DNA of 64,000 nt from IMG/VR virus record IMGVR_UViG_3300042261_002385, positions 310,001 to 374,000 of that record; one strand, written 5' to 3'. The notes under the pieces are model-generated. The model searched no databases. It worked only from the letters and a program-made list of their open reading frames with translations, and had not been told where the DNA came from. The position numbers were made by a program, and so were the translations under genes. Below are positions 3,394-61,669 of the stretch, in pieces; positions within the stretch are counted from its first letter, which is position 1, and each line of letters starts with the position of its first letter.

Positions 3394-4473
3394 ATGAACA
3401 TAAATTTTTCAGAAGTGACATTTTCGTCAATAGTAGAAATCGGAGAACTAGCTCAAAAACTTGAAAAAGAATCAGGTGACAAATACTTGAAACTACATAG
3501 AGGGGTCATGGACGTCACTACAATCGACTTAAATTCTTTTACCAAAGATATAGACTTTAATAGTAAATCTATTCAACAATACGGAGGCAATGACGGGGAT
3601 AACTCATTAATTGAAACGATTAAAGAAAAATTCAACCTAAATGATCACTATGTTATGACTGTTCCAGGTGGAATGGCAACTTTAGATTTAGTAATTAATT
3701 CACTGAGTGATGATACTTTTTGGGTTCCGAAATATCATTGGGGATCTTGGAATAAAATTCTTCAAACTCACAGAAAACAGATTAAAACTTTTGATGACTT
3801 CAATATCAGACAAGCAGAATGTGATGGTGGGGTAGTTATGTTGTGTTACCCTTCAAATCCAACCGGATTCAGTCCTAATTTTGAAGATTTAAAATATTTT
3901 GCTGATAAATGTAAAGAAAAAGAACAAACTTTAATCTTAGATTTACCATACTATTATCTTTTCAATGAAATGTCTGATAAAATCTATCAACTCTATTCCG
4001 ATAATGTAATCATATTATCATCTTTTTCTAAATCAGTTGGTTTGTCTGGATTAAGAATCGGATATATTGCCACTAAAAATCAAGAACTTTATAAAACCAT
4101 GAGAGTTAGGTCACTTTACAAATATAACTCTATATCCACTGTTCCTCAACAAATAATTAGTCAATTGTTTACTTCAAATAAAGGAAGAACGGCTTTTGAA
4201 AACTACAGAAGAAAAACACAAGCTCATATTAGAAAAAACATTGACTACTTAGCAAAAAGAGGTTTCCTATTTAGTGAATACACTTCAATTCCAACGGGAC
4301 CTTTTGCTATTATCAACAAAAACTTTGACGAACTTCTAAAAAACAGAATTACTAGCGTTCCACTTAATAAATTCACTTATAAAGATAGTGATGAAAATCT
4401 TAAAAACTATTCTAGAATTTCAGTATCAGTTGATAGTGATTTATTTCAAGAATATTTCGATAAACTTAAGTGA
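3394..4473 (+). CDS. PLP-dependent aminotransferase, class I/II fold
   Basis: PSNPTG, D-x-x-Y and SFSKSVGLSGLRIGY (PLP-binding lysine) motifs; C-terminal RIS. Confidence 0.88.
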   Translation: MNINFSEVTFSSIVEIGELAQKLEKESGDKYLKLHRGVMDVTTIDLNSFTKDIDFNSKSIQQYGGNDGDNSLIETIKEKFNLNDHYVMTVPGGMATLDLVINSLSDDTFWVPKYHWGSWNKILQTHRKQIKTFDDFNIRQAECDGGVVMLCYPSNPTGFSPNFEDLKYFADKCKEKEQTLILDLPYYYLFNEMSDKIYQLYSDNVIILSSFSKSVGLSGLRIGYIATKNQELYKTMRVRSLYKYNSISTVPQQIISQLFTSNKGRTAFENYRRKTQAHIRKNIDYLAKRGFLFSEYTSIPTGPFAIINKNFDELLKNRITSVPLNKFTYKDSDENLKNYSRISVSVDSDLFQEYFDKLK

Positions 4474-5178
4474 TTACTTTTTTCTCTTTTTCTTTCTAGC
4501 TTTAGCTTCTTTAGCTTTTGCCCATAGAGCAGCATCTGCTTTTCTAGCACCACCAGCACCAGTGATAAATGAATTTACTCGACCCATACCCCATTGGTGT
4601 TGAGCAACACCAGGTCTATGTCCCGCGTTCCAAGCCTGCATACCTTTAGCAAAAACTTTTCTTAGAATACCCATTGGAATTCCAGATGCTTTCGACTTTT
4701 TCTTTAATGACTTAGTTACTCCTGATTTTTTAGACTCCTCTAAAGAGTCAAGCTCAGTTGATGTAAACTGTTGATTCTTTCTAAGGCTATCTATAATTTG
4801 TCTTACCACAAAGATATCTAAATCCAACTCAATTGAAATTTGTTCTTCAGTTAGTCCCATTTCTAAAAGTTCAGATACATCTTCCATATCAGCATGTGTG
4901 AAGTCCTCAAAACTATAGTTTTCATAGTATTCATCACCTTCCTCTTCCTCTCTTGGATTATATGGACCACCTATAAAGTGCTCACCGGTTGATGATTCCC
5001 TATCTAATTCACCTTGCCATTCTTCAGTTTCTAAAGAATGATATAGTTCTTCTAACTCATCATCAGTCATTACTTCTAACTCATCTAATTCAAAAGTAGA
5101 AGTATTATAAAGAGTCTCAATCATCTCTTGTCTGTTTGATGGCTCTCTGAAGCTTTCGTATGTTCTAAGGTATTTCAT
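4474..5178 (-). CDS. Conserved viral protein (DUF5824-like C-terminal domain) with CTS-like N-terminus
   Basis: LKKKSKASGIPMGILRKVFAKGMQAWNAGHRPGVAQHQWGMGRVNSFITG matches a domain I recognise from T4-like phages and large DNA viruses; starts MKYLRTYESF. Confidence 0.65.
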   Translation of the reverse strand: MKYLRTYESFREPSNRQEMIETLYNTSTFELDELEVMTDDELEELYHSLETEEWQGELDRESSTGEHFIGGPYNPREEEEGDEYYENYSFEDFTHADMEDVSELLEMGLTEEQISIELDLDIFVVRQIIDSLRKNQQFTSTELDSLEESKKSGVTKSLKKKSKASGIPMGILRKVFAKGMQAWNAGHRPGVAQHQWGMGRVNSFITGAGGARKADAALWAKAKEAKARKKKRKK

Positions 5179-46026: not shown

Positions 46027-46058
46027 TAAGGAGAGACTTTTGTTTCTCCTTTTTTTTT
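46027..46058 (+). terminator. Intrinsic terminator
   Basis: AAGGAGA-GACTTTTGTT-TCTCCTT followed by a T-run. Confidence 0.65.
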
Positions 46059-46167
46059 GAAAAAAAATTCAAAAAAAGACAAAACAAAGTTATTTTTTCC
46101 GATATATACATACAGTGTGAAATTATTTTTGAACAGATTCATTTCTGTATCAAAAAAAAAATTTCTA

Positions 46168-47004
46168 ATGAGAAACACAAAAACTTACAATGAGCTCGTT
46201 CAAAAGATGCGAGCATTTTTTTTGCAAAAAGGATTTATTGAAGTCCCAACACAATCAAGATTATCAATCTTAGCAGCATGTGAAAATCCACATTCAATTA
46301 CAACATTTAACTATTCGGGTGAAGTTTGGCCACTTCCACAAACCGGTCAAATGTGGTTAGAACACGAACTATTAAAAAATCCAGAATGGCCTGGTTGTTT
46401 CTGTATATCAACTTCTTACAGACAAGAGAAAACTCCAATTCCAGGACGACATGAGTTAATTTTTCCTATGTTTGAGTTTGAATCAAAAGGTGGTATGAAA
46501 GAACTACTTAAGTTAGAATCTGAACTATTAGAACATTTAGGATTTGACCAACCAGTTGAAGTCAACTATAATGATGTTTGTGAAGAATACGGTGGTGTAT
46601 CTATTTTAGAAGATGAACACGAAAGTAGAATGTGGAAAGAAAAAGGTTCTGTAGTGTCACTTCAAAATTTTCCAAGAAGAACAAATCCTTTCTGGAATAT
46701 GCAACACAATAATGGTGAAATCTTTAACAAAGTAGATGTTATTCTTTATGGTCAAGAAACAATCGGTTCGGCTGAAAGAAGCTGTGATGTTGATAAAATG
46801 AAAGAAATGTTTTATACAATTGAAGAAGGCAGATATTCACAAAAACTTTTTGAATTATTCGGAAAAGAAAGAGTTGAATCTGAACTAGAAGTGTTTTTAC
46901 AATATGAATTCTTTCCACGTTTTGGAGGAGGAATTGGTATGACAAGATTAGCAAGAGCTTATGAAATGATGTTACAAGAAAAGAAAGTAGAGGAGTTAGT
47001 ATAA
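46168..47004 (+). CDS. Class II aaRS (Asp/Asn/Lys) catalytic-domain protein lacking the anticodon domain; AsnRS2/asparagine-synthetase-like
   Basis: Motif 1 RAFFLQKGFIEV, motif 2 SYRQE...RH...FPMFEFE, motif 3 GGGIGMTRL; no N-terminal OB domain; start 46168. Confidence 0.75.
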   Translation: MRNTKTYNELVQKMRAFFLQKGFIEVPTQSRLSILAACENPHSITTFNYSGEVWPLPQTGQMWLEHELLKNPEWPGCFCISTSYRQEKTPIPGRHELIFPMFEFESKGGMKELLKLESELLEHLGFDQPVEVNYNDVCEEYGGVSILEDEHESRMWKEKGSVVSLQNFPRRTNPFWNMQHNNGEIFNKVDVILYGQETIGSAERSCDVDKMKEMFYTIEEGRYSQKLFELFGKERVESELEVFLQYEFFPRFGGGIGMTRLARAYEMMLQEKKVEELV

Positions 47005-51812: not shown

Positions 51813-53099
<1,287 letters not shown>

Positions 53100-57366: not shown

Positions 57367-57612
57367 ATGTCAAGTTCAAAAAATTCAAGTTCAGGTCTAA
57401 GTTTAGCAGGTGTGTTATTCATAGTATTTTTAGTTCTTAAACTAACTGGAAACATTGATTGGTCGTGGTGGTGGGTTACTTCACCTCTTTGGATACCACT
57501 TGGACTAGCAGTTTGTTTTTTCTTTATAATTCTTTTTGTAGTAATGTTACTTCTGATATTTGGCTTTAGTCCAGATGATTTAAAGAATAAGTTTGAAAGA
57601 TATAGAAAATAA
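57367..57612 (+). CDS. Small Trp-rich phage membrane protein
   Basis: LFIVFLVLKLTGNIDWSWWWVTSPLWIP, a motif common in phage small membrane proteins. Confidence 0.8.
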   Translation: MSSSKNSSSGLSLAGVLFIVFLVLKLTGNIDWSWWWVTSPLWIPLGLAVCFFFIILFVVMLLLIFGFSPDDLKNKFERYRK

Positions 57613-57640
57613 AAAAACCAGTCTTAATGACTGGTTTTTT
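57611..57640. terminator. Bidirectional intrinsic terminator
   Basis: AAAAAAACCAGTC-TTAAT-GACTGGTTTTTTT. Confidence 0.8.
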
Positions 57641-58080
57641 TATATTTTTTCAAACTTTATAGTATTAAATATACATTTCACATTGCCTATCATTGATAGT
57701 CCTTTACCACCAACTTGAATTACCTCACCAACATTTATATCAGTAACTAAATCCATTGAATTGTCAGTACTTACAACTAACCAATTGTTTGTATTATCGT
57801 TTAATACTTTTACAGCACTTGGTGTATTTCTATGAGATTGACTTAAATCAATTTCCTTATCTTTGATTAACTTAAATGAACTAGAACTCTGGAATATTTT
57901 AACCTTTGCTAAGGGTTTTAACATCAATTCATTGTTTTCATTTCTTGCTAATAAACATTCAACTTCTAATACATCTGGTGTTCCTGGATTTATAGTAACT
58001 AAAAATCTATCTATGATTTGAACACCGTCTTGTTTATGTTGTTCGTAATTGAATTCCTCAAATATTTTTATATATCTCAT
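57640..58080 (-). CDS. Hypothetical protein with CTS-like N-terminus
   Basis: Starts MRYIKIFEEFNYE. Confidence 0.72.
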   Translation of the reverse strand: MRYIKIFEEFNYEQHKQDGVQIIDRFLVTINPGTPDVLEVECLLARNENNELMLKPLAKVKIFQSSSSFKLIKDKEIDLSQSHRNTPSAVKVLNDNTNNWLVVSTDNSMDLVTDINVGEVIQVGGKGLSMIGNVKCIFNTIKFEKI

Positions 58081-58168
58081 AATCTATTATTATTTATATT
58101 TCATTATATATTTATTCAGAAAATTGAATTTTTAATTCTTTTTTTCCAACACCACTTTAAAAAATTTT

Positions 58169-58546
58169 CTAATCTCTTGGAAAATCCTTACCTCTTTCAA
58201 CAACTTTCACTTCCCAATCTTTAGGTTGAAAAATCTCTTTAGTAAGTCTAACAGCTTTATCATAATCAAAAGGCTTACAAGAAAAAATATCTATAAAACA
58301 ATATCCTTTTTCTTCAAAAGAATGAACAGAAATATGAGATTCCGCAATTATAACAATTCCAGTAATTCCCCTATCTTCAGGAACTAAACCTTCATAAGGA
58401 AAAACATATGGTTGTGTGATTGGAGTCATTTGGATTAACTCAGGTATATTTTTTAAATAATCAAAGTGTAATTGATAATTAGATAATATATCTTTAGGAC
58501 ACCCTTTTAAGTCAAGGGTGATGTGAGGTCCAAATGCGTCTTCCAT
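58169..58546 (-). CDS. speD: S-adenosylmethionine decarboxylase proenzyme (class I, pyruvoyl)
   Basis: GPHITLDL.GC, GITGIVIIAESHISVHSF.E.GY.FIDIFSC (E/S autocleavage site). Confidence 0.88.
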   Translation of the reverse strand: MEDAFGPHITLDLKGCPKDILSNYQLHFDYLKNIPELIQMTPITQPYVFPYEGLVPEDRGITGIVIIAESHISVHSFEEKGYCFIDIFSCKPFDYDKAVRLTKEIFQPKDWEVKVVERGKDFPRD

Positions 58547-58618
58547 CGTTCATAAATTTTATTTTTTTAATTGAAGATTTATATAGTAAAAAAATTTGTT
58601 TCTTTTCTCGGAAATCCT

Positions 58619-58626
58619 TAAATTTG
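58619..58626 (+). promoter_or_regulatory. Bacteroidota-type -7 promoter element TAnnTTTG (also at 6588, 14597, 56726 on +; 45336 and 49360 on -)
   Basis: Exact TAAATTTG or TATATTTG in intergenic positions just upstream of genes; matches the established Bacteroidota primary-sigma -7 consensus. Confidence 0.65.
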
Positions 58627-58630
58627 TTAC

Positions 58631-58890
58631 AAGGTATTTAAGTTATACCGAAACCTAAATTAACAAATATCCTGTAATAAGCCAAGACGGCAATCTATGG
58701 TAAATAACAGGCTAACTTTTGCCGAGGTTAGGGGATAATAAATCTGTTGGTCCCGCAGTAGATGTCAGTATCAGTCATACCGATACGGTCGAACTAAAAG
58801 GTGTATGACAGGTGGATGAAATGTGAATTCTGAAACCATTTTGAAACCGATTAGTGTTTGATTCACACAGACACAATCGGTTTTTTTATT
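58631..58890 (+). ncRNA. Candidate structured non-coding RNA of unknown class
   Basis: ORF-free, GC-enriched relative to flanks, promoter at 58619, terminator hairpin at 58844-58887, several helices and complementary loops CGGCAA/TTGCCG. Confidence 0.65.
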
Positions 58891-59640
58891 TTAGTGTTTT
58901 AAGTTATTTTCTAAGGTGAAATGAACATTAACACTTATATTTCTTGACCACGCATAAGGCATTGCTGAACCAGCAACTTCAAAAGAAATTCTAAAACTAC
59001 CTCTTTCGTAATCTAAATTACCTAATAATTTTTGAGAAATTTCTTCAACTAAATCAAATAAACTTTGTTCAAATTTATTTAGTGATTTACCACTTCCTCT
59101 TAGTGTGGAAATATCAGTCGATATAATACCATTATCATCAAATTTACTAGTAATAGTCATATTTCCATGCCAGATATCTTGAATATTTTTATTTAAAGAA
59201 ATCCTTAATTCTTCTTGACTAAAATATCCTACTTCTTCATCATCTAAATCAACAGAATGTTTTTGTATATCATAATCCATAAAATTTAATTCAAAGTCTT
59301 GGTCATACAACTCAACTAGACAATTGTTAATCATATTTAGCGTCTCAGGATTATAAGCTGGATCACGATGTCTTAGTTCTCCTGTCTCATCAGACTCTTT
59401 AACATGAGTTACTCCTTTAGCTGGCGCTAAATCTCTTAAATCAGTTACCTCAGATGGTTTTCCTTTTTTTCTCTTACTTTTAGTTCTTAAATAAAAAGAT
59501 GGATCTCCTGAACCATCCATAGCTCCGACACCTGGTAAACTTCCAACTGTTGCTGATACTACAGGTCCAGCTCCAGCAGTTGAGGAAGCAGTTGCTACCG
59601 CATTTTCTTGAAACTTTTTATATGATTTGATATATCTCAT
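58891..59640 (-). CDS. Two-module hypothetical protein with CTS-like N-terminus
   Basis: MRYIKSYKKFQEN; Ala/Gly-rich then basic segment ending HVKE/S, followed by an acidic globular domain. Confidence 0.72.
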   Translation of the reverse strand: MRYIKSYKKFQENAVATASSTAGAGPVVSATVGSLPGVGAMDGSGDPSFYLRTKSKRKKGKPSEVTDLRDLAPAKGVTHVKESDETGELRHRDPAYNPETLNMINNCLVELYDQDFELNFMDYDIQKHSVDLDDEEVGYFSQEELRISLNKNIQDIWHGNMTITSKFDDNGIISTDISTLRGSGKSLNKFEQSLFDLVEEISQKLLGNLDYERGSFRISFEVAGSAMPYAWSRNISVNVHFTLENNLKH

Positions 59641-59658
59641 TTAGATATATATTAAATT

Positions 59659-59883
59659 ATGAAAAATAGAATTGACCTACATGGTATAAAACATGAAAAT
59701 GTCCAAAGAGAGTTAGACCAATTTTATTGGGAAATGATGCAAAAAGGTCACTCTGAAGTTGAAGTTGTAACTGGTATATCTAATAGAATGAAAGAGATAG
59801 TCAAACAGGTTTCTGAAGATTATAACTTTACGGTTTTAGAAACTACAATAAATCCTGGAGCTTTAATAGTAAGAATAAAATAA
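59659..59883 (+). CDS. Smr-domain protein
   Basis: RIDLHG...V...L..F......VEVVTG......N.GAL.V.I. Confidence 0.7.
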   Translation: MKNRIDLHGIKHENVQRELDQFYWEMMQKGHSEVEVVTGISNRMKEIVKQVSEDYNFTVLETTINPGALIVRIK

Positions 59884-60165
59884 TTAAAGATATTTTATTT
59901 CAGAATAAAGAGGTCTATTTACTCTATGTGACATATAACCTTCTATACCTCTTGAGTCTAAACCTAATTCCTTAATCAACTCTTGAGAGTATTGAACAGG
60001 ATTTTTACCCATTTCTATTTCTGACTCAATGTCTAAACGATTTATTAACTCTCTTACTTCAACCGCGCTCATATTTAACTTACCTAATTGTCTTCTTAAT
60101 TCATCAACAAATTCTTCCGGTGTGTAGTTTGATTCAAATAATTTAAAAGACTTTAAGTGCTTCAT
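59884..60165 (-). CDS. Small hypothetical protein with CTS-like N-terminus
   Basis: MKHLKSFKLFES; TAATATATA 4 nt upstream. Confidence 0.75.
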   Translation of the reverse strand: MKHLKSFKLFESNYTPEEFVDELRRQLGKLNMSAVEVRELINRLDIESEIEMGKNPVQYSQELIKELGLDSRGIEGYMSHRVNRPLYSEIKYL

Positions 60166-60211
60166 AGTTTATATATTAAATATATAATTTGTAAGATTAA
60201 TATATACTTTT

Positions 60212-61669
60212 ATGATAAGCAAATATTTAGAATTTATTAACGAGTCAAAAGAACTCATTTTAGAATCTGACGTTGTCTATTCTAAAATGTTTAGAACAGC
60301 ATTAACAAAGATTGATAGCCCAATATCAAAAATACTTTTGGATGTAGAAAATAAAGACCTACCAGTAGCTTCAAACTATTTTGATTTAGCTAGAGGAAAA
60401 AACGACACACTTTCTGTTATTCCAGATAGAAAAGCTAAAGAGATTTTAGAAGATACAAAAGAAATGGTTAGATTTACTGGCTCAGGTGGTGGTTGGTTAA
60501 AACACTCAGATGCTAACACATCTATATTCCAACAATTAGGATATGAACCAGAAGGTGAAGTTTATCAACCTAATTCAACTGCAATAGGTGAGGTAGTTTC
60601 AAAAGTAACATCACAAACATCAGGAAAAGTTTGGTGTTATGTGAAATTTCCAGACGGTAAAGGTGTTTATAATCAAGAGAAACTTAGAGTAGTTGATGAG
60701 AGACTAAAAGAAGTTTGGTCAAAAAATAGACAAGAAGTTAGAATAGGAAGAGCTATAAGAGCACTATTAACAGTAGCAGGTGAGAATGTTTTGGATAAAG
60801 ATTTAGAGGTTTTTGTAAATCTTTGGAAAGCAACAATTGATAAAATGAATGATAGATTCCAATATTTTGATGTAGTTGAAGGCCAAGATATCGGTCACTG
60901 GTATCACTACTCTAACTACAAAGAAAGAAGTGGAAGTCTTGGTTCTAGTTGTATGTCAAATGTAAATTCTAATTATTTCGATATCTATATGACAAATACA
61001 GATGTTTGTAAATTAATAATACTTAGATCTGTTGAAGATGATTCTCTAATTGTTGGAAGAGCTTTACTTTGGACACTTACCGATGGTAAAAAATTTGTTG
61101 ATAGAATTTACACAATTCAAGATTCAGATGTTCAACTTTTTAGAGACTATGCAAGAGAGAATGGTTGGTATACAAAACAATATAATTCATCTTCAGATTC
61201 TGGTAGAGCAAATGCTCCTGATGGAACACAAGTTGATTTAGGAAAAATTACCGTAGATATTAAAGCAGGAATGTATGAAGCTTATCCTTATTTAGATACT
61301 CTTAAATATTTTAAACCAAGAGAAGGAACACTTTCTAATGTGAGAACTGGTCGAGGTGATGAATATACATTAGAGGACACTTCTGGTGAACTTTGGAGAT
61401 GTGAATACTGTGGTGGATCAGGAATGCAAACTTGTGGTAACTGTGATGGGGACGGTTATTGGGATTGTCACAGATGTAGTGGATCTGGAGAAAGAGAGTG
61501 TGGTGAATGCGATGGTTCTGGAAAGGTAGAGGGAGACGAAGGTGAAGAGGAGTGTCCAGAATGTGGTGGGTCAGGAAACAATGAATGTTCATATTGTGAT
61601 GGTTCAGGAAGAGAAGATTGTGATGATTGCAACGGAAGAGGAGAACACTCTTGTTATGAATGTCAATAA
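60212..61669 (+). CDS. Hypothetical protein with C-terminal DnaJ-type CxxCxGxG zinc-finger repeats; paralog of 1885..3003
   Basis: Seven CxxCxGxG units (CEYCGGSG to CDDCNGRG) plus CYEC; GSLGSSCM, GRALLW, DRIY core; starts MISKYLEFINES. Confidence 0.82.
   Translation: MISKYLEFINESKELILESDVVYSKMFRTALTKIDSPISKILLDVENKDLPVASNYFDLARGKNDTLSVIPDRKAKEILEDTKEMVRFTGSGGGWLKHSDANTSIFQQLGYEPEGEVYQPNSTAIGEVVSKVTSQTSGKVWCYVKFPDGKGVYNQEKLRVVDERLKEVWSKNRQEVRIGRAIRALLTVAGENVLDKDLEVFVNLWKATIDKMNDRFQYFDVVEGQDIGHWYHYSNYKERSGSLGSSCMSNVNSNYFDIYMTNTDVCKLIILRSVEDDSLIVGRALLWTLTDGKKFVDRIYTIQDSDVQLFRDYARENGWYTKQYNSSSDSGRANAPDGTQVDLGKITVDIKAGMYEAYPYLDTLKYFKPREGTLSNVRTGRGDEYTLEDTSGELWRCEYCGGSGMQTCGNCDGDGYWDCHRCSGSGERECGECDGSGKVEGDEGEEECPECGGSGNNECSYCDGSGREDCDDCNGRGEHSCYECQ

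What the first reader, a model, noticed from the sequence alone, without database searches (positions are those of the whole stretch)
58631..58890. Free-standing ~260-nt structured RNA with perfectly complementary kissing loops
Seen: the longest ORF-free stretch, with its own TAAATTTG promoter (58619) and a long terminal hairpin (AAACCGATT...AATCGGTTT plus T-run). Helices: GGTAT/ATACC (58633-49); CCA-AGA[CGGCAA]TCT-A-TGG (58682-700); CTAACTT[TTGCCG]AGGTTAG (58712-31); GTCATAC/GTATGAC (58774-809). The two 6-nt loops are exact reverse complements. CCTGT (58671) can pair with either ACAGG (58707 or 58808), allowing a closed ~150-nt core or a switch. It lacks the hallmarks I know for tRNA, tmRNA, SRP, RNase P, SAM riboswitches and small ribozymes. 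Inference: a new phage ncRNA; intermolecular kissing could give oligomers as in phi29 pRNA, or it may be a protein or defence decoy.
Basis: partly seen in the sequence, partly recalled or inferred. Interest (0 to 1): 0.85.

Follow-up and report, generated by a model that had tools for sequence, protein, structure and literature searches.

The report
New ornate RNA of huge phages
This is a real, transcribed, roughly 255-nucleotide non-coding RNA gene found only in very large freshwater phages of Bacteroidota; it folds through three conserved long-range base-pairings, matches no known RNA family, and its job is still unknown.

Summary
Window 58547-58890 is the longest ORF-free stretch. It carries a Bacteroidota-type promoter (TTTG 58595, TAAATTTG 58619), a structured RNA on the + strand (about 58631-58889) and an intrinsic terminator.

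About 50 distinct homologs were collected, from IMG/VR contigs up to 483 kb, the 634 and 642 kb Mahaphage genomes, and lake metagenomes. On 45 of them, 95.6% of the proposed pairs are kept and 24 of 45 pairs show compensatory changes.

CGGCAA/UUGCCG switches to CGGUAA/UUACCG in five sequences. GUCAUAC/GUAUGAC is an H-type pseudoknot, not a plain helix. I found a third contact, between the P7 loop and the terminator loop: GUGAA/UUCAC switches to GCGAA/UCGC.

There is no Rfam match, no tRNA or tmRNA call, no coding signal and no literature hit. In three metatranscriptomes the only contigs on 3 kb of this region are the RNA itself.

Function is inferred only. The most likely reading is a compact trans-acting RNA that binds a protein. 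Self-assembly through the loops (as in pRNA or ROOL) or catalysis are not excluded.

One RNA::rpsE fusion contig (L079) looks like a chimera or a one-off recombination.

The parts
58595..58626 (+). Bacteroidota-type promoter: -33 TTTG (58595-98) and -7 box TAAATTTG (58619-26). The predicted transcript start is about 58631-58633.
   Evidence: Sequence. TAnnTTTG is kept at the same distance in all homologs. Assigning it to the Bacteroidota sigma-A consensus rests on established knowledge, not on a test here.
58631..58889 (+). The whole ncRNA gene, about 255-260 nt.
   Evidence: Conserved as a block in about 50 homologs. It is the only part of a 6 kb query that matches the 634 kb phage by megablast. 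Metatranscriptome contigs cover 58642-58834, 58669-58844 and 58655-58842. Many G-U pairs fix the strand as +.
58633..58649 (+). P1: 5' terminal hairpin GGUAU/AUACC with a conserved 7-nt loop, followed by the conserved box CGAAACC.
   Evidence: helix 1: 95.8% paired, 2 pairs with compensatory change.
58671..58711 (+). P2 (CCUGU 58671-75 / ACAGG 58707-11), which encloses P3.
   Evidence: helix 2: 5 of 5 pairs show changes on both sides.
58681..58701 (+). P3 hairpin. Its loop CGGCAA (58688-93) is the first half of kissing loop KL1.
   Evidence: helices 3-4. One search adds pair 51-73 (100% paired, 3 pair types).
58712..58731 (+). P4 hairpin. Its loop UUGCCG (58719-24) is the second half of KL1.
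   Evidence: helices 5-6. KL1 is 100% paired in 45 sequences. Position 4 is C-G in 40 and U-A in 5. RNAalifold picks KL1 by itself.
58732..58754 (+). P5 hairpin GGGAU/GUCCC with a nearly invariant 13-nt loop AAUAAAUCUGUUG.
   Evidence: invariant in that set, which was selected partly on this motif. L087/L095, found with a pattern that does not use this motif, have GGAUU/AAUCC, i.e. three compensatory pairs.
58757..58793 (+). AGUA (58757-60) opposite GAA (58791-93), flanked by P6a (GAU 58761-63 / GUC 58788-90). This looks like a possible loop-E / sarcin-ricin-like module. Inside it sits P6 (58766-72 / 58782-87).
   Evidence: P6a is 99.3% paired (pair 136-163: UG 27, CG 11, UA 6). P6 shows 5 of 5 pairs with compensatory change. 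The loop-E reading is inference from the sequence motif only.
58774..58809 (+). PK2, an H-type pseudoknot. The P6 loop GUCAUACC (58774-81) pairs with GUGUAUGAC (58801-09) across the conserved linker GGUCGAAYUAAAAGG.
   Evidence: helix 9: 99% paired, 4 of 7 pairs compensatory. add pair 156-177 (CG 40, UA 3).
58818..58830 (+). P7 mini-hairpin GAA/UUC. Its loop AUGUGAA contains GUGAA (58823-27), one half of KL3. It is followed by the box UGAAACC.
   Evidence: the stem is GAA/UUC, GAAG/CUUC or GAG/CUC in different lineages.
58844..58889 (+). Intrinsic terminator: a long hairpin AAACCGAUU...AAUCGGUUU plus a U-run. Its apical loop UUCAC (58862-66) is the other half of KL3.
   Evidence: Stem sequences differ between lineages but stay complementary. 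KL3: 32 sequences have GUGAA with UUCAC; 6 sequences from 3 lineages have GCGAA with UCGC.
58891..59640 (-). Convergent neighbour gene (249 aa, unknown fold). It has a conserved N-terminal leader of about 85 aa. It is a candidate partner or simply a syntenic neighbour.
   Evidence: Next to the RNA in 42 of 53 loci, in three different arrangements. No Pfam or PHROG hit. The AF2 model has no PDB neighbour. The leader recurs on a gp23-like capsid protein, a GH108 lysozyme and others.
58169..58546 (-). Divergent neighbour gene: S-adenosylmethionine decarboxylase.
   Evidence: Pfam PF02675, E = 3e-26. Upstream of the RNA in about 29 of 53 loci.

Best explanation
What is shown: a free-standing gene for a stable, highly structured non-coding RNA of about 255 nt.

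What is predicted from sequence motifs: it is read on the + strand by the host RNA polymerase from a Bacteroidota -33/-7 promoter and ends at its own intrinsic terminator.

What is shown by covariation: the fold has nine helices (P1-P7, P6a and the terminator stem). Three long-range pairings tie them together:
- KL1: P3 loop CGGCAA with P4 loop UUGCCG.
- PK2: P6 loop GUCAUAC with GUAUGAC further downstream.
- KL3: P7 loop GUGAA with terminator loop UUCAC.

What is inferred: the three contacts form within one molecule. That would give a compact particle which leaves the nearly invariant unpaired nucleotides exposed. These are the P5 loop AUCUGUUGG, the AGUA/GAA module, the linker GAAYUAAAAGG and two 'hairpin + GAAACC' boxes.

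The particle would then act in trans during infection by binding a protein, either as the scaffold of a ribonucleoprotein or as a decoy. The conserved neighbouring family of leader-bearing, probably capsid-targeted proteins is the only concrete candidate partner.

That it is a genuine new structured ncRNA family I hold at about 0.9. The trans-acting protein-binding mechanism I hold at about 0.35-0.4. The confidence number given for this explanation refers to the mechanism.
For: Gene anatomy:
- It lies in the longest ORF-free stretch and has a promoter and terminator.
- The strand is fixed by fold z-scores and by frequent G-U pairs.

Conservation:
- About 50 distinct homologs were found in huge-phage contigs and lake metagenomes.
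- There is one copy per locus, and one place in each of the complete 634 and 642 kb genomes.
- The RNA is the only part of 6 kb that still matches by megablast.

Structure:
- 95.6% of cells are paired and 24 of 45 pairs are compensatory. No shuffle out of 500 reaches this. Slid controls give 30-42% paired and 5-9 compensatory pairs.
- P6a is supported, KL3 covariation, and P5 compensation.

Not coding:
- There is no excess of third-position change.
- Frame-breaking indels occur in 20 of 45 sequences.

Expression:
- In three metatranscriptomes the only contigs on window 57400-60400 are the RNA itself.

Not a cis element:
- The downstream gene is convergent in most loci, on the same strand in some and upstream in others.

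Possible partner:
- Adjacency to the leader-bearing protein family survives three rearrangements.
- In the phage database, the same two records out of 50,697 hold both the RNA and that leader.
Against: - No partner has been shown. The neighbouring protein has no recognisable RNA-binding fold.
- Its conserved part is an N-terminal leader shared by unrelated proteins, including a gp23-like capsid protein. The adjacency may therefore be plain synteny within one phage clade.
- The contigs used carry no strand and no exact ends.
- Covariation cannot tell intramolecular from intermolecular loop pairing.
- An RNA with three tertiary contacts is as complex as ribozymes and large riboswitches, which is compatible with other functions.
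Confidence: 0.4

Rival explanations
1. Self-assembling RNA. One or more of the loop-loop pairs form between molecules ('hand in hand'). This would build a homo-oligomeric ring or cage, as in phi29 pRNA or the ROOL/GOLLD assemblies, possibly working in head assembly or packaging near the capsid-targeted neighbour proteins.
For: - Each molecule carries three pairs of mutually, not self-, complementary loops, and they covary. This is the same signature as the pRNA loops.
- By my own geometry estimate, P3 and P4 leave opposite ends of P2, with no linker between P2 and P4. Intramolecular KL1 would therefore need a sharp fold-back.
- The RNA is phage-borne and derived from lakes, like GOLLD (bioRxiv 10.1101/2024.12.08.627333, seen).
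- The neighbours carry a leader that is also present on a gp23-like capsid protein.
Against: - PK2 has classical H-type pseudoknot spacing (loops of 1-2, 1 and 17 nt), and KL3 joins two neighbouring hairpins through a 14-18 nt linker. Both fit intramolecular folding.
- No Rfam match to pRNA, ROOL or GOLLD.
- T4-like packaging motors are not known to need an RNA (established knowledge).
- Nothing here measures oligomeric state.
Confidence: 0.2
2. Catalytic or ligand-sensing RNA: a new ribozyme, or an aptamer that senses a metabolite. It could act in cis where a gene follows on the same strand (the L004/L008 group), or in trans.
For: - Its size, the multiple pseudoknots and the invariant unpaired nucleotides are typical of ribozymes and large riboswitches.
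- In 8 or more loci the terminator is followed within about 20 nt by a gene on the same strand.
- The upstream neighbour is an AdoMet decarboxylase.
- GGUCCCGC resembles part of the cobalamin-riboswitch core. This comparison is from memory only.
Against: - In most loci, including the window, the downstream gene is convergent, so cis control is not general.
- No Rfam riboswitch or ribozyme model scores, even at E <= 10.
- Metatranscriptome contigs span the core uninterrupted, although contigs would not reveal a cleavage site.
Confidence: 0.12
3. Base-pairing regulator or 3'-end element: an antisense or sRNA-like transcript. It would act on the convergent neighbour mRNA through the shared terminator, or on other mRNAs.
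For: - The RNA and the 249-aa gene converge on one hairpin. The gene's stop codon lies at 58891-93 and the RNA ends at about 58889.
Against: - The arrangement is not conserved.
- A scan for complements of RNA 8-10-mers in the window found no systematic target. The only signal was CTACTGCG, 3 further sites, all inside coding regions.
- The elaborate conserved tertiary fold is not needed for antisense action.
Confidence: 0.08
4. Derivative or mimic of the host rpsE (ribosomal protein S5) 5' region or of a ribosomal-protein leader, for example a decoy for an autoregulatory ribosomal protein.
For: - L079, a contig of a Bacteroidetes MAG, has the promoter plus the 5' 170 nt of the RNA joined to S5-L30-L15-SecY-Map-IF1.
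- The conserved RNA box UCGAAYUAAAAGRU equals rpsE codons for I-E-L-K-D.
Against: - A relative whose S5 is 97% identical has the normal L18-S5 junction and no such element.
- The join lies in a 14-15 nt microhomology. It removes the S5 start codon and first 12 codons.
- The RNA-like piece sits at the contig end and is about one read long.
- The putative N-terminal extension has no protein relatives.
- By my estimate, 14-nt matches between a 250-nt RNA and a Mb-sized genome are expected by chance.
Confidence: 0.04
5. Not a functional RNA: a chance intergenic structure, or a small protein gene (the 29-aa ORF 58719-58808).
For: - A 29-aa ORF exists in the window.
Against: - The ORF is broken by indels in 20 of 45 homologs and shows no codon-position pattern.
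- There is strong covariation.
- Nucleotide conservation exceeds that of the flanking genes.
Confidence: 0.02

Closest known systems
phi29 packaging RNA (pRNA, Rfam RF00044)
   Same: A phage-encoded, free-standing structured RNA with its own promoter. It carries two hairpin loops on one molecule that are complementary to each other and covary.
   Different: No sequence or structure match. This RNA is about 255 nt with three tertiary pairings and an H-type pseudoknot, against a 120-174 nt three-way junction. The genome is a huge T4-like phage of Bacteroidota (UvsW-like helicase, PolB, gp23-like relatives), not a small protein-primed podovirus. Oligomerisation was not tested.
GOLLD and ROOL large ornate RNAs
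   Same: Orphan, pseudoknot-rich ncRNAs that are often phage-borne. GOLLD is also abundant in lake metagenomes. Their multimerisation has been shown by cryo-EM (bioRxiv 10.1101/2024.12.08.627333).
   Different: No Rfam hit. This RNA is 2-3 times smaller. It is not next to tRNA genes. Its hosts are Bacteroidota phages. Its quaternary structure is unknown.
Cobalamin riboswitch (kissing-loop L5-L13 class)
   Same: About 200 nt, a long-range kissing loop, and a conserved GGUCCCGC-like core string (the last point is from memory).
   Different: No score with RF00174, RF01482 or RF01689, even at E <= 10. It has no B12 box. It is not upstream of a gene in most loci. It has its own terminator, which is part of the fold through KL3.
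T4 stable RNAs species 1 and 2 (rnaC, rnaD)
   Same: Small stable RNAs of unknown function encoded by a large T4-type phage (from memory).
   Different: The T4 RNAs lie in the tRNA cluster and are processed from tRNA precursors. This RNA has its own promoter and terminator, has no tRNAs nearby, and shows no similarity to any cultured phage record.
Loop E / sarcin-ricin (bulged-G) motif
   Same: AGUA opposite GAA, directly flanked by a covarying Watson-Crick helix (P6a). This is the sequence signature of the motif, which is a common protein- and RNA-docking module.
   Different: Only the sequence pattern is seen. The flank on the other side is not a canonical pair, and no 3D evidence exists.

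Membership tests
Any Rfam 15 family (4227 models) | Covariance-model score at or near the family threshold. | tested here: not met
   No gathering-level hit in the whole window. In permissive E-value mode only noise appeared on 58450-59000: mir-4003 at E = 2.8 and SNORA41 at E = 7.4. Nothing fell on the RNA in 9 other members.
tRNA / tmRNA | Cloverleaf, or a tRNA-like domain plus a tag reading frame. | tested here: not met
   ARAGORN finds none in the window and none overlapping the RNA in 25 loci.
phi29-like pRNA | Match to the pRNA model and its three-way-junction architecture. | tested here: not met
   Searches give no hit. The covariation-supported fold is different.
phi29-like pRNA | Two loops complementary to each other that pair between molecules to form a ring on the portal. 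| not testable with these tools
   Complementary, covarying loops are present. Intra- versus intermolecular pairing needs native gels or cryo-EM.
GOLLD / ROOL | Match to the family model, size of 500-800 nt, and frequent adjacency to tRNA genes. | tested here: not met
   No Rfam hit. The RNA is about 255 nt. No adjacent tRNAs.
Riboswitch / cis-regulatory leader | Located in the 5' UTR of the regulated gene, in a consistent orientation. | tested here: not met
   The downstream gene is convergent in the window and in most loci. It is on the same strand only in the L004/L008 group, and the related gene lies upstream in the L005/L007 group.
Ribosomal-protein (rpsE/S5) leader | Conserved position upstream of rpsE in bacterial genomes. 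| tested here: not met
   Only one contig (L079) shows this. A relative with 97% identical S5 has L18-S5 with no element. Only one scan of bacterial genomes was possible.
Protein-coding small ORF | Conserved reading frame and a codon-position substitution pattern. | tested here: not met
   variability by codon position is 0.084, 0.056 and 0.081, and the frame is broken in 20 of 45 sequences.
Guide or scaffold RNA of a mobile-element nuclease or recombinase (omega RNA, bridge RNA, retron msr) | Adjacent TnpB/IscB/IS110/RT gene and a variable guide segment. | tested here: not met
   The neighbours are AdoMet decarboxylase, a leader-bearing unknown protein and an Smr-domain protein. The loops and ends of the RNA are conserved rather than variable. 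Only the immediate neighbours were scanned.

The most novel reading that the evidence does not exclude
The RNA is a new kind of functional RNA machine of the largest known phages. Either it self-assembles through its covarying loops into an RNA-only or RNA-protein architecture that works with the capsid-targeted proteins encoded next to it (for example, it is packed into or acts at the head), or it is a new ribozyme class. In either case it would be a new biochemical activity, not a variant of a known family.
Probability: 0.12. Interest if true: 0.9.

Novelty: new variant of a known kind. Interest (0 to 1): 0.66.

Why it matters
Large, pseudoknot-rich orphan RNAs are rare. In the past they have turned out to be ribozymes, riboswitches or, recently, self-assembling RNA cages.

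This one has several features that make it a good target:
- It is compact, at about 255 nt.
- It has three independently covarying tertiary contacts, one of which includes the terminator hairpin itself.
- It appears in metatranscriptomes.
- It is confined to a clade that contains the largest phage genomes known (634-642 kb, Mahaphage clade, predicted Bacteroidetes hosts; PMC7162821).

It is small enough for direct structural work by SHAPE or cryo-EM, and the compensatory mutants are obvious. It is a ready candidate for a new Rfam family and for learning what huge phages do with non-coding RNA.

Tried and rejected
- Known RNA families: Rfam in gathering and permissive mode on the window and on nine other members, plus ARAGORN. 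Nothing was found.
- Protein-coding reading of the 29-aa ORF: rejected.
- Extra copies in the window or loci: nhmmer finds one per locus.
- The S5 link. I followed the RNA::rpsE contig L079 through a protein search of the putative N-terminal extension (no hits), close S5 relatives and their context, and blastn against L083-L085. I concluded it is a junction at a 14-15 nt microhomology, probably a chimera or a single event.
- The neighbour protein as an RNA-binding partner. Pfam, PHROGs, ESM Atlas and AlphaFold2 plus Foldseek PDB gave no function. A profile search shows only a shared N-terminal leader.
- Antisense targets in the window: no systematic complement.
- A looser pattern brought only GC-rich false positives (L009-L016). 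Several hits were likewise unrelated GC-rich DNA.
- Literature: full-text searches for structured RNAs of huge phages and for the invariant core strings gave no description of this RNA.
- TAG or TGA recoding: the ORF statistics do not clearly require it in this window. No read-through protein was needed.

Full report
**1. Observation**

Window 58547-58890 lies between two minus-strand genes. These are an S-adenosylmethionine decarboxylase (58169-58546) and an unknown 249-aa protein (58891-59640). It is the longest stretch of the window without an ORF of 50 or 70 aa or more.

The + strand folds better than its shuffles (z = -2.57, 0 of 200 as good). The minus strand does not (z = -1.29).

Upstream there is a -33 TTTG (58595) and a -7 TAAATTTG (58619). 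This is the promoter type of Bacteroidota, an assignment from established knowledge. Downstream there is a long hairpin plus a U-run, oriented for the + strand.

**2. Relatives**

blastn against 50,697 phage records found only two matches. They are LR745206 (634,780 bp) and LR756502 (642,428 bp), with one place in each. Their sizes match the 634 and 642 kb complete genomes of Al-Shayeb et al. 2020. That paper says all of its largest genomes fall in the Mahaphage clade, and that those of more than 634 kb are predicted to replicate in Bacteroidetes (PMC7162821).

With 6 kb of the window as query, the RNA gene was the only part that still matched by megablast. It is therefore better conserved at the DNA level than the protein genes around it.

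Pattern scans gave:
- 6 IMG/VR contigs of 26-436 kb. One of them, L003, is identical to the window over the RNA region that was compared.
- About 40 metagenome contigs, mostly from lakes.
- With a pattern that avoids the P5 motif, the more divergent L086 and L087/L095, from contigs of 39, 242 and 483 kb.

In all there are about 50 distinct sequences, down to about 63% identity. There is one copy per locus and no second copy in the window. The exact sequence occurs in many DNA runs from freshwater, wastewater and estuary samples.

**3. Structure**

On 45 distinct core sequences (alignment A2) I tested a fold with two pseudoknots.
- 95.6% of cells are paired.
- 24 of 45 pairs have changes on both sides.
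- No shuffle out of 500 reaches any of the five measures.
- Sliding the 3' partners gives 30-42% paired and 5-9 compensatory pairs.

The helices, in window coordinates:
- P1: 58633-37 / 58645-49.
- P2: 58671-75 / 58707-11 (5 of 5 pairs covary).
- P3: 58681-87 / 58694-701.
- P4: 58712-18 / 58725-31.
- P5: 58732-36 / 58750-54.
- P6: 58766-72 / 58782-87 (5 of 5 pairs covary).
- P6a: 58761-63 / 58788-90 (99.3% paired, three pair types at one position).

P5 was invariant in the first set, which had been selected on that motif. In L087/L095 it reads GGAUU/AAUCC instead of GGGAU/GUCCC, which is three compensatory pairs.

The frequent G-U pairs would be A-C on the other strand. This fixes the transcript as the + strand.

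**4. Three tertiary pairings**

It is paired in 45 of 45 sequences. Its fourth position is C-G in 40 and U-A in 5. RNAalifold chooses it unprompted.
The 5' half is the loop of the P6 hairpin, so the pairing is an H-type pseudoknot. It is 99% paired and 4 of 7 pairs are compensatory.
- KL3 is new. The loop of a mini-hairpin P7 (GUGAA, 58823-27) is complementary to the apical loop of the terminator hairpin (UUCAC, 58862-66). All 32 sequences with GUGAA have UUCAC or UCAC. All 6 sequences with GCGAA, from three lineages, have UCGC. The terminator is therefore part of the fold.

Between P5 and P6a, AGUA faces GAA. This is the sequence signature of a loop-E / sarcin-ricin module, which is inference only.

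It is 55.6% paired, the same as shuffles.

**5. What it is not**

- No Rfam 15 family matches the RNA in the window or in nine other members, even at E <= 10.
- ARAGORN finds no tRNA or tmRNA.
- The 29-aa ORF inside it is not conserved. Frame-breaking indels occur in 20 of 45 sequences and there is no codon-position pattern.
- Full-text searches, including the invariant core strings, found no description of it.

**6. Expression**

In three metatranscriptomes (X15, X16, X17), the only assembled contigs that lie on window 57400-60400 are 58642-58834, 58669-58844 and 58655-58842. They are 99-100% identical to the window, and both neighbour genes have zero depth.

DNA carry-over would not single out the RNA gene, so this supports an abundant, stable transcript. 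There are limits: contigs carry no strand and no true ends.

A fourth run, a marine metatranscriptome, holds 90-95% relatives.

**7. Context**

The window carries the following:
- a UvsW-like helicase;
- a family B DNA polymerase;
- a baseplate gpV-like protein;
- lysins;
- adenylosuccinate synthetase;
- a class II aminoacyl-tRNA-synthetase-like protein.

These fit a very large T4-like phage.

The gene next to the RNA (249 aa) and a 93-aa gene nearby belong to one family; in other loci they are fused into a single protein. The family sits beside the RNA in 42 of 53 loci, in three arrangements:
- convergent;
- downstream on the same strand;
- upstream on the same strand.

In LR756502 it lies 3.8 kb away.

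Pfam, PHROGs, the ESM Atlas and AlphaFold2 plus Foldseek give no function for it.

A profile search found 167 representatives, most of which match only the N-terminal 85 residues or so. The same leader sits on a gp23-like major capsid protein, a GH108 lysozyme and an NFACT-R protein. Its first residues (M-K/R-x-x-K-x-Y/F-K-x-F-x-E) recall the T4 capsid-targeting sequence. That comparison is from memory; PMC3012670 describes the concept but does not give the sequence.

The neighbours are therefore probably head-targeted proteins. Whether they bind the RNA is unknown.

**8. The S5 side track**

The single scan of bacterial genomes returned one true hit, L079, a 4.8 kb contig of a Bacteroidetes MAG. 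In it, the promoter and the first 170 nt or so of the RNA (L079:34-215) run directly into rpsE-rpmD-rplO-secY-map-infA. The RNA-like part is only 73-82% identical to any phage copy.

The evidence points away from a functional link:
- The join lies in a 14-15 nt stretch shared by the RNA (UCGAAYUAAAAGRU) and the rpsE codons for I-E-L-K-D.
- The join removes the S5 start and its first 12 codons.
- No protein resembles the would-be N-terminal extension.
- A relative with 97% identical S5 has the normal L18-S5 junction.
- The RNA-like part sits at the contig end and is about one read long.

I read this as a chimera or a single illegitimate recombination, not as evidence that the RNA is an S5 leader. 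A 14-nt match to a Mb-sized genome is expected by chance (my estimate).

**9. Mechanism**

What is shown: a conserved gene, predicted start and stop signals, a fold locked by three long-range pairings, and presence in RNA libraries.

What is inferred: the RNA acts in trans, because its orientation relative to its neighbours varies. PK2 and KL3 have spacings that fit folding within one molecule, so a compact monomer is the simplest model. The invariant unpaired nucleotides would then form a binding surface for a protein, making the RNA an RNP scaffold or a decoy. I put this at about 0.35-0.4.

The rivals are:
- intermolecular kissing that gives oligomers, as in pRNA, ROOL or GOLLD (0.2);
- a ribozyme or ligand sensor (0.12);
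- a base-pairing or 3'-end element (0.08);
- an S5-leader mimic (0.04);
- no function or a coding gene (0.02).

A scan for antisense targets in the window found nothing systematic.

**10. Novelty and verdict**

This is a new, well-supported family of ornate phage ncRNA with no detectable relation to any curated family. It belongs to the known general kind of orphan structured phage RNAs, so I rate it a new variant of a known kind.

- Interest: 0.66.
- That it is a real, new structured RNA: about 0.9.
- That its function is as proposed: about 0.4.

Noticed in passing
L079:1-680 (CAIRRW010000057.1, Bacteroidetes MAG): The promoter plus the 5' 170 nt of this RNA family are fused, at a 14-15 nt microhomology, to codon 13 of rpsE, followed by rpmD-rplO-secY-map-infA. 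There is no start codon for S5. A close relative (L085) has a normal L18-S5 junction. This is probably a chimeric contig end or a single illegitimate recombination.
   Followed up: yes
window 59640(-), 60165(-), 5738(-), 49483(+) (ORF starts); also P0262, P0160, P0180: Several ORFs start with M-x-x-(I/L/M)-K-x-(F/Y)-x-x-F-x-E. Those at 59640 and 60165 belong to the family next to the RNA. In the 249-aa member (start 59640) the motif opens an 85-aa leader rich in G/A/S with a basic KKGxPSxVxDxR patch. The same leader occurs on a gp23-like major capsid protein, a GH108 lysozyme and an NFACT-R protein elsewhere. It looks like a capsid-targeting or propeptide leader of head-internal proteins, as in T4.
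   Followed up: partly
window 58631-58655 and 58818-58848: The conserved box GAAACC follows a short hairpin twice: P1 then CGAAACC, and P7 then UGAAACC. In the window a third UGAAACC starts the terminator stem. This could be a repeated docking site. It is unexplained.
   Followed up: no
window 24604, 37142(-), 48841(-): CTACTGCG, the complement of the invariant CGCAGUAG of the RNA, occurs 4 times in the window including the RNA's own site, against 0.14 expected. The three other sites are inside coding regions on mixed strands. This is probably chance after many tests.
   Followed up: partly
window 57609-57643: A perfect 15-bp hairpin flanked by A- and T-runs, which would act as a bidirectional terminator between convergent genes.
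   Followed up: no
window 51813-53099(-), 58169-58546(-), 46057-47004(+), 59659-59883(+): Auxiliary genes: adenylosuccinate synthetase (E = 7e-172), S-adenosylmethionine decarboxylase, a class II aminoacyl-tRNA-synthetase-like protein (315 aa) and a small Smr-domain protein. The Smr gene keeps its place near the RNA in 32 of 53 loci.
   Followed up: no
L079:3779-3907 and 3850-4793: Downstream of infA, where rpmJ and rpsM are expected, the MAG contig has about 900 nt of repeat-containing non-coding sequence. There is a weak L20-leader-like hit (28 bits, E = 0.05, below threshold).
   Followed up: no
whole window: ORF statistics under the standard code already cover most of the window, so there is no clear sign of TAG or TGA reassignment here.
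   Followed up: partly
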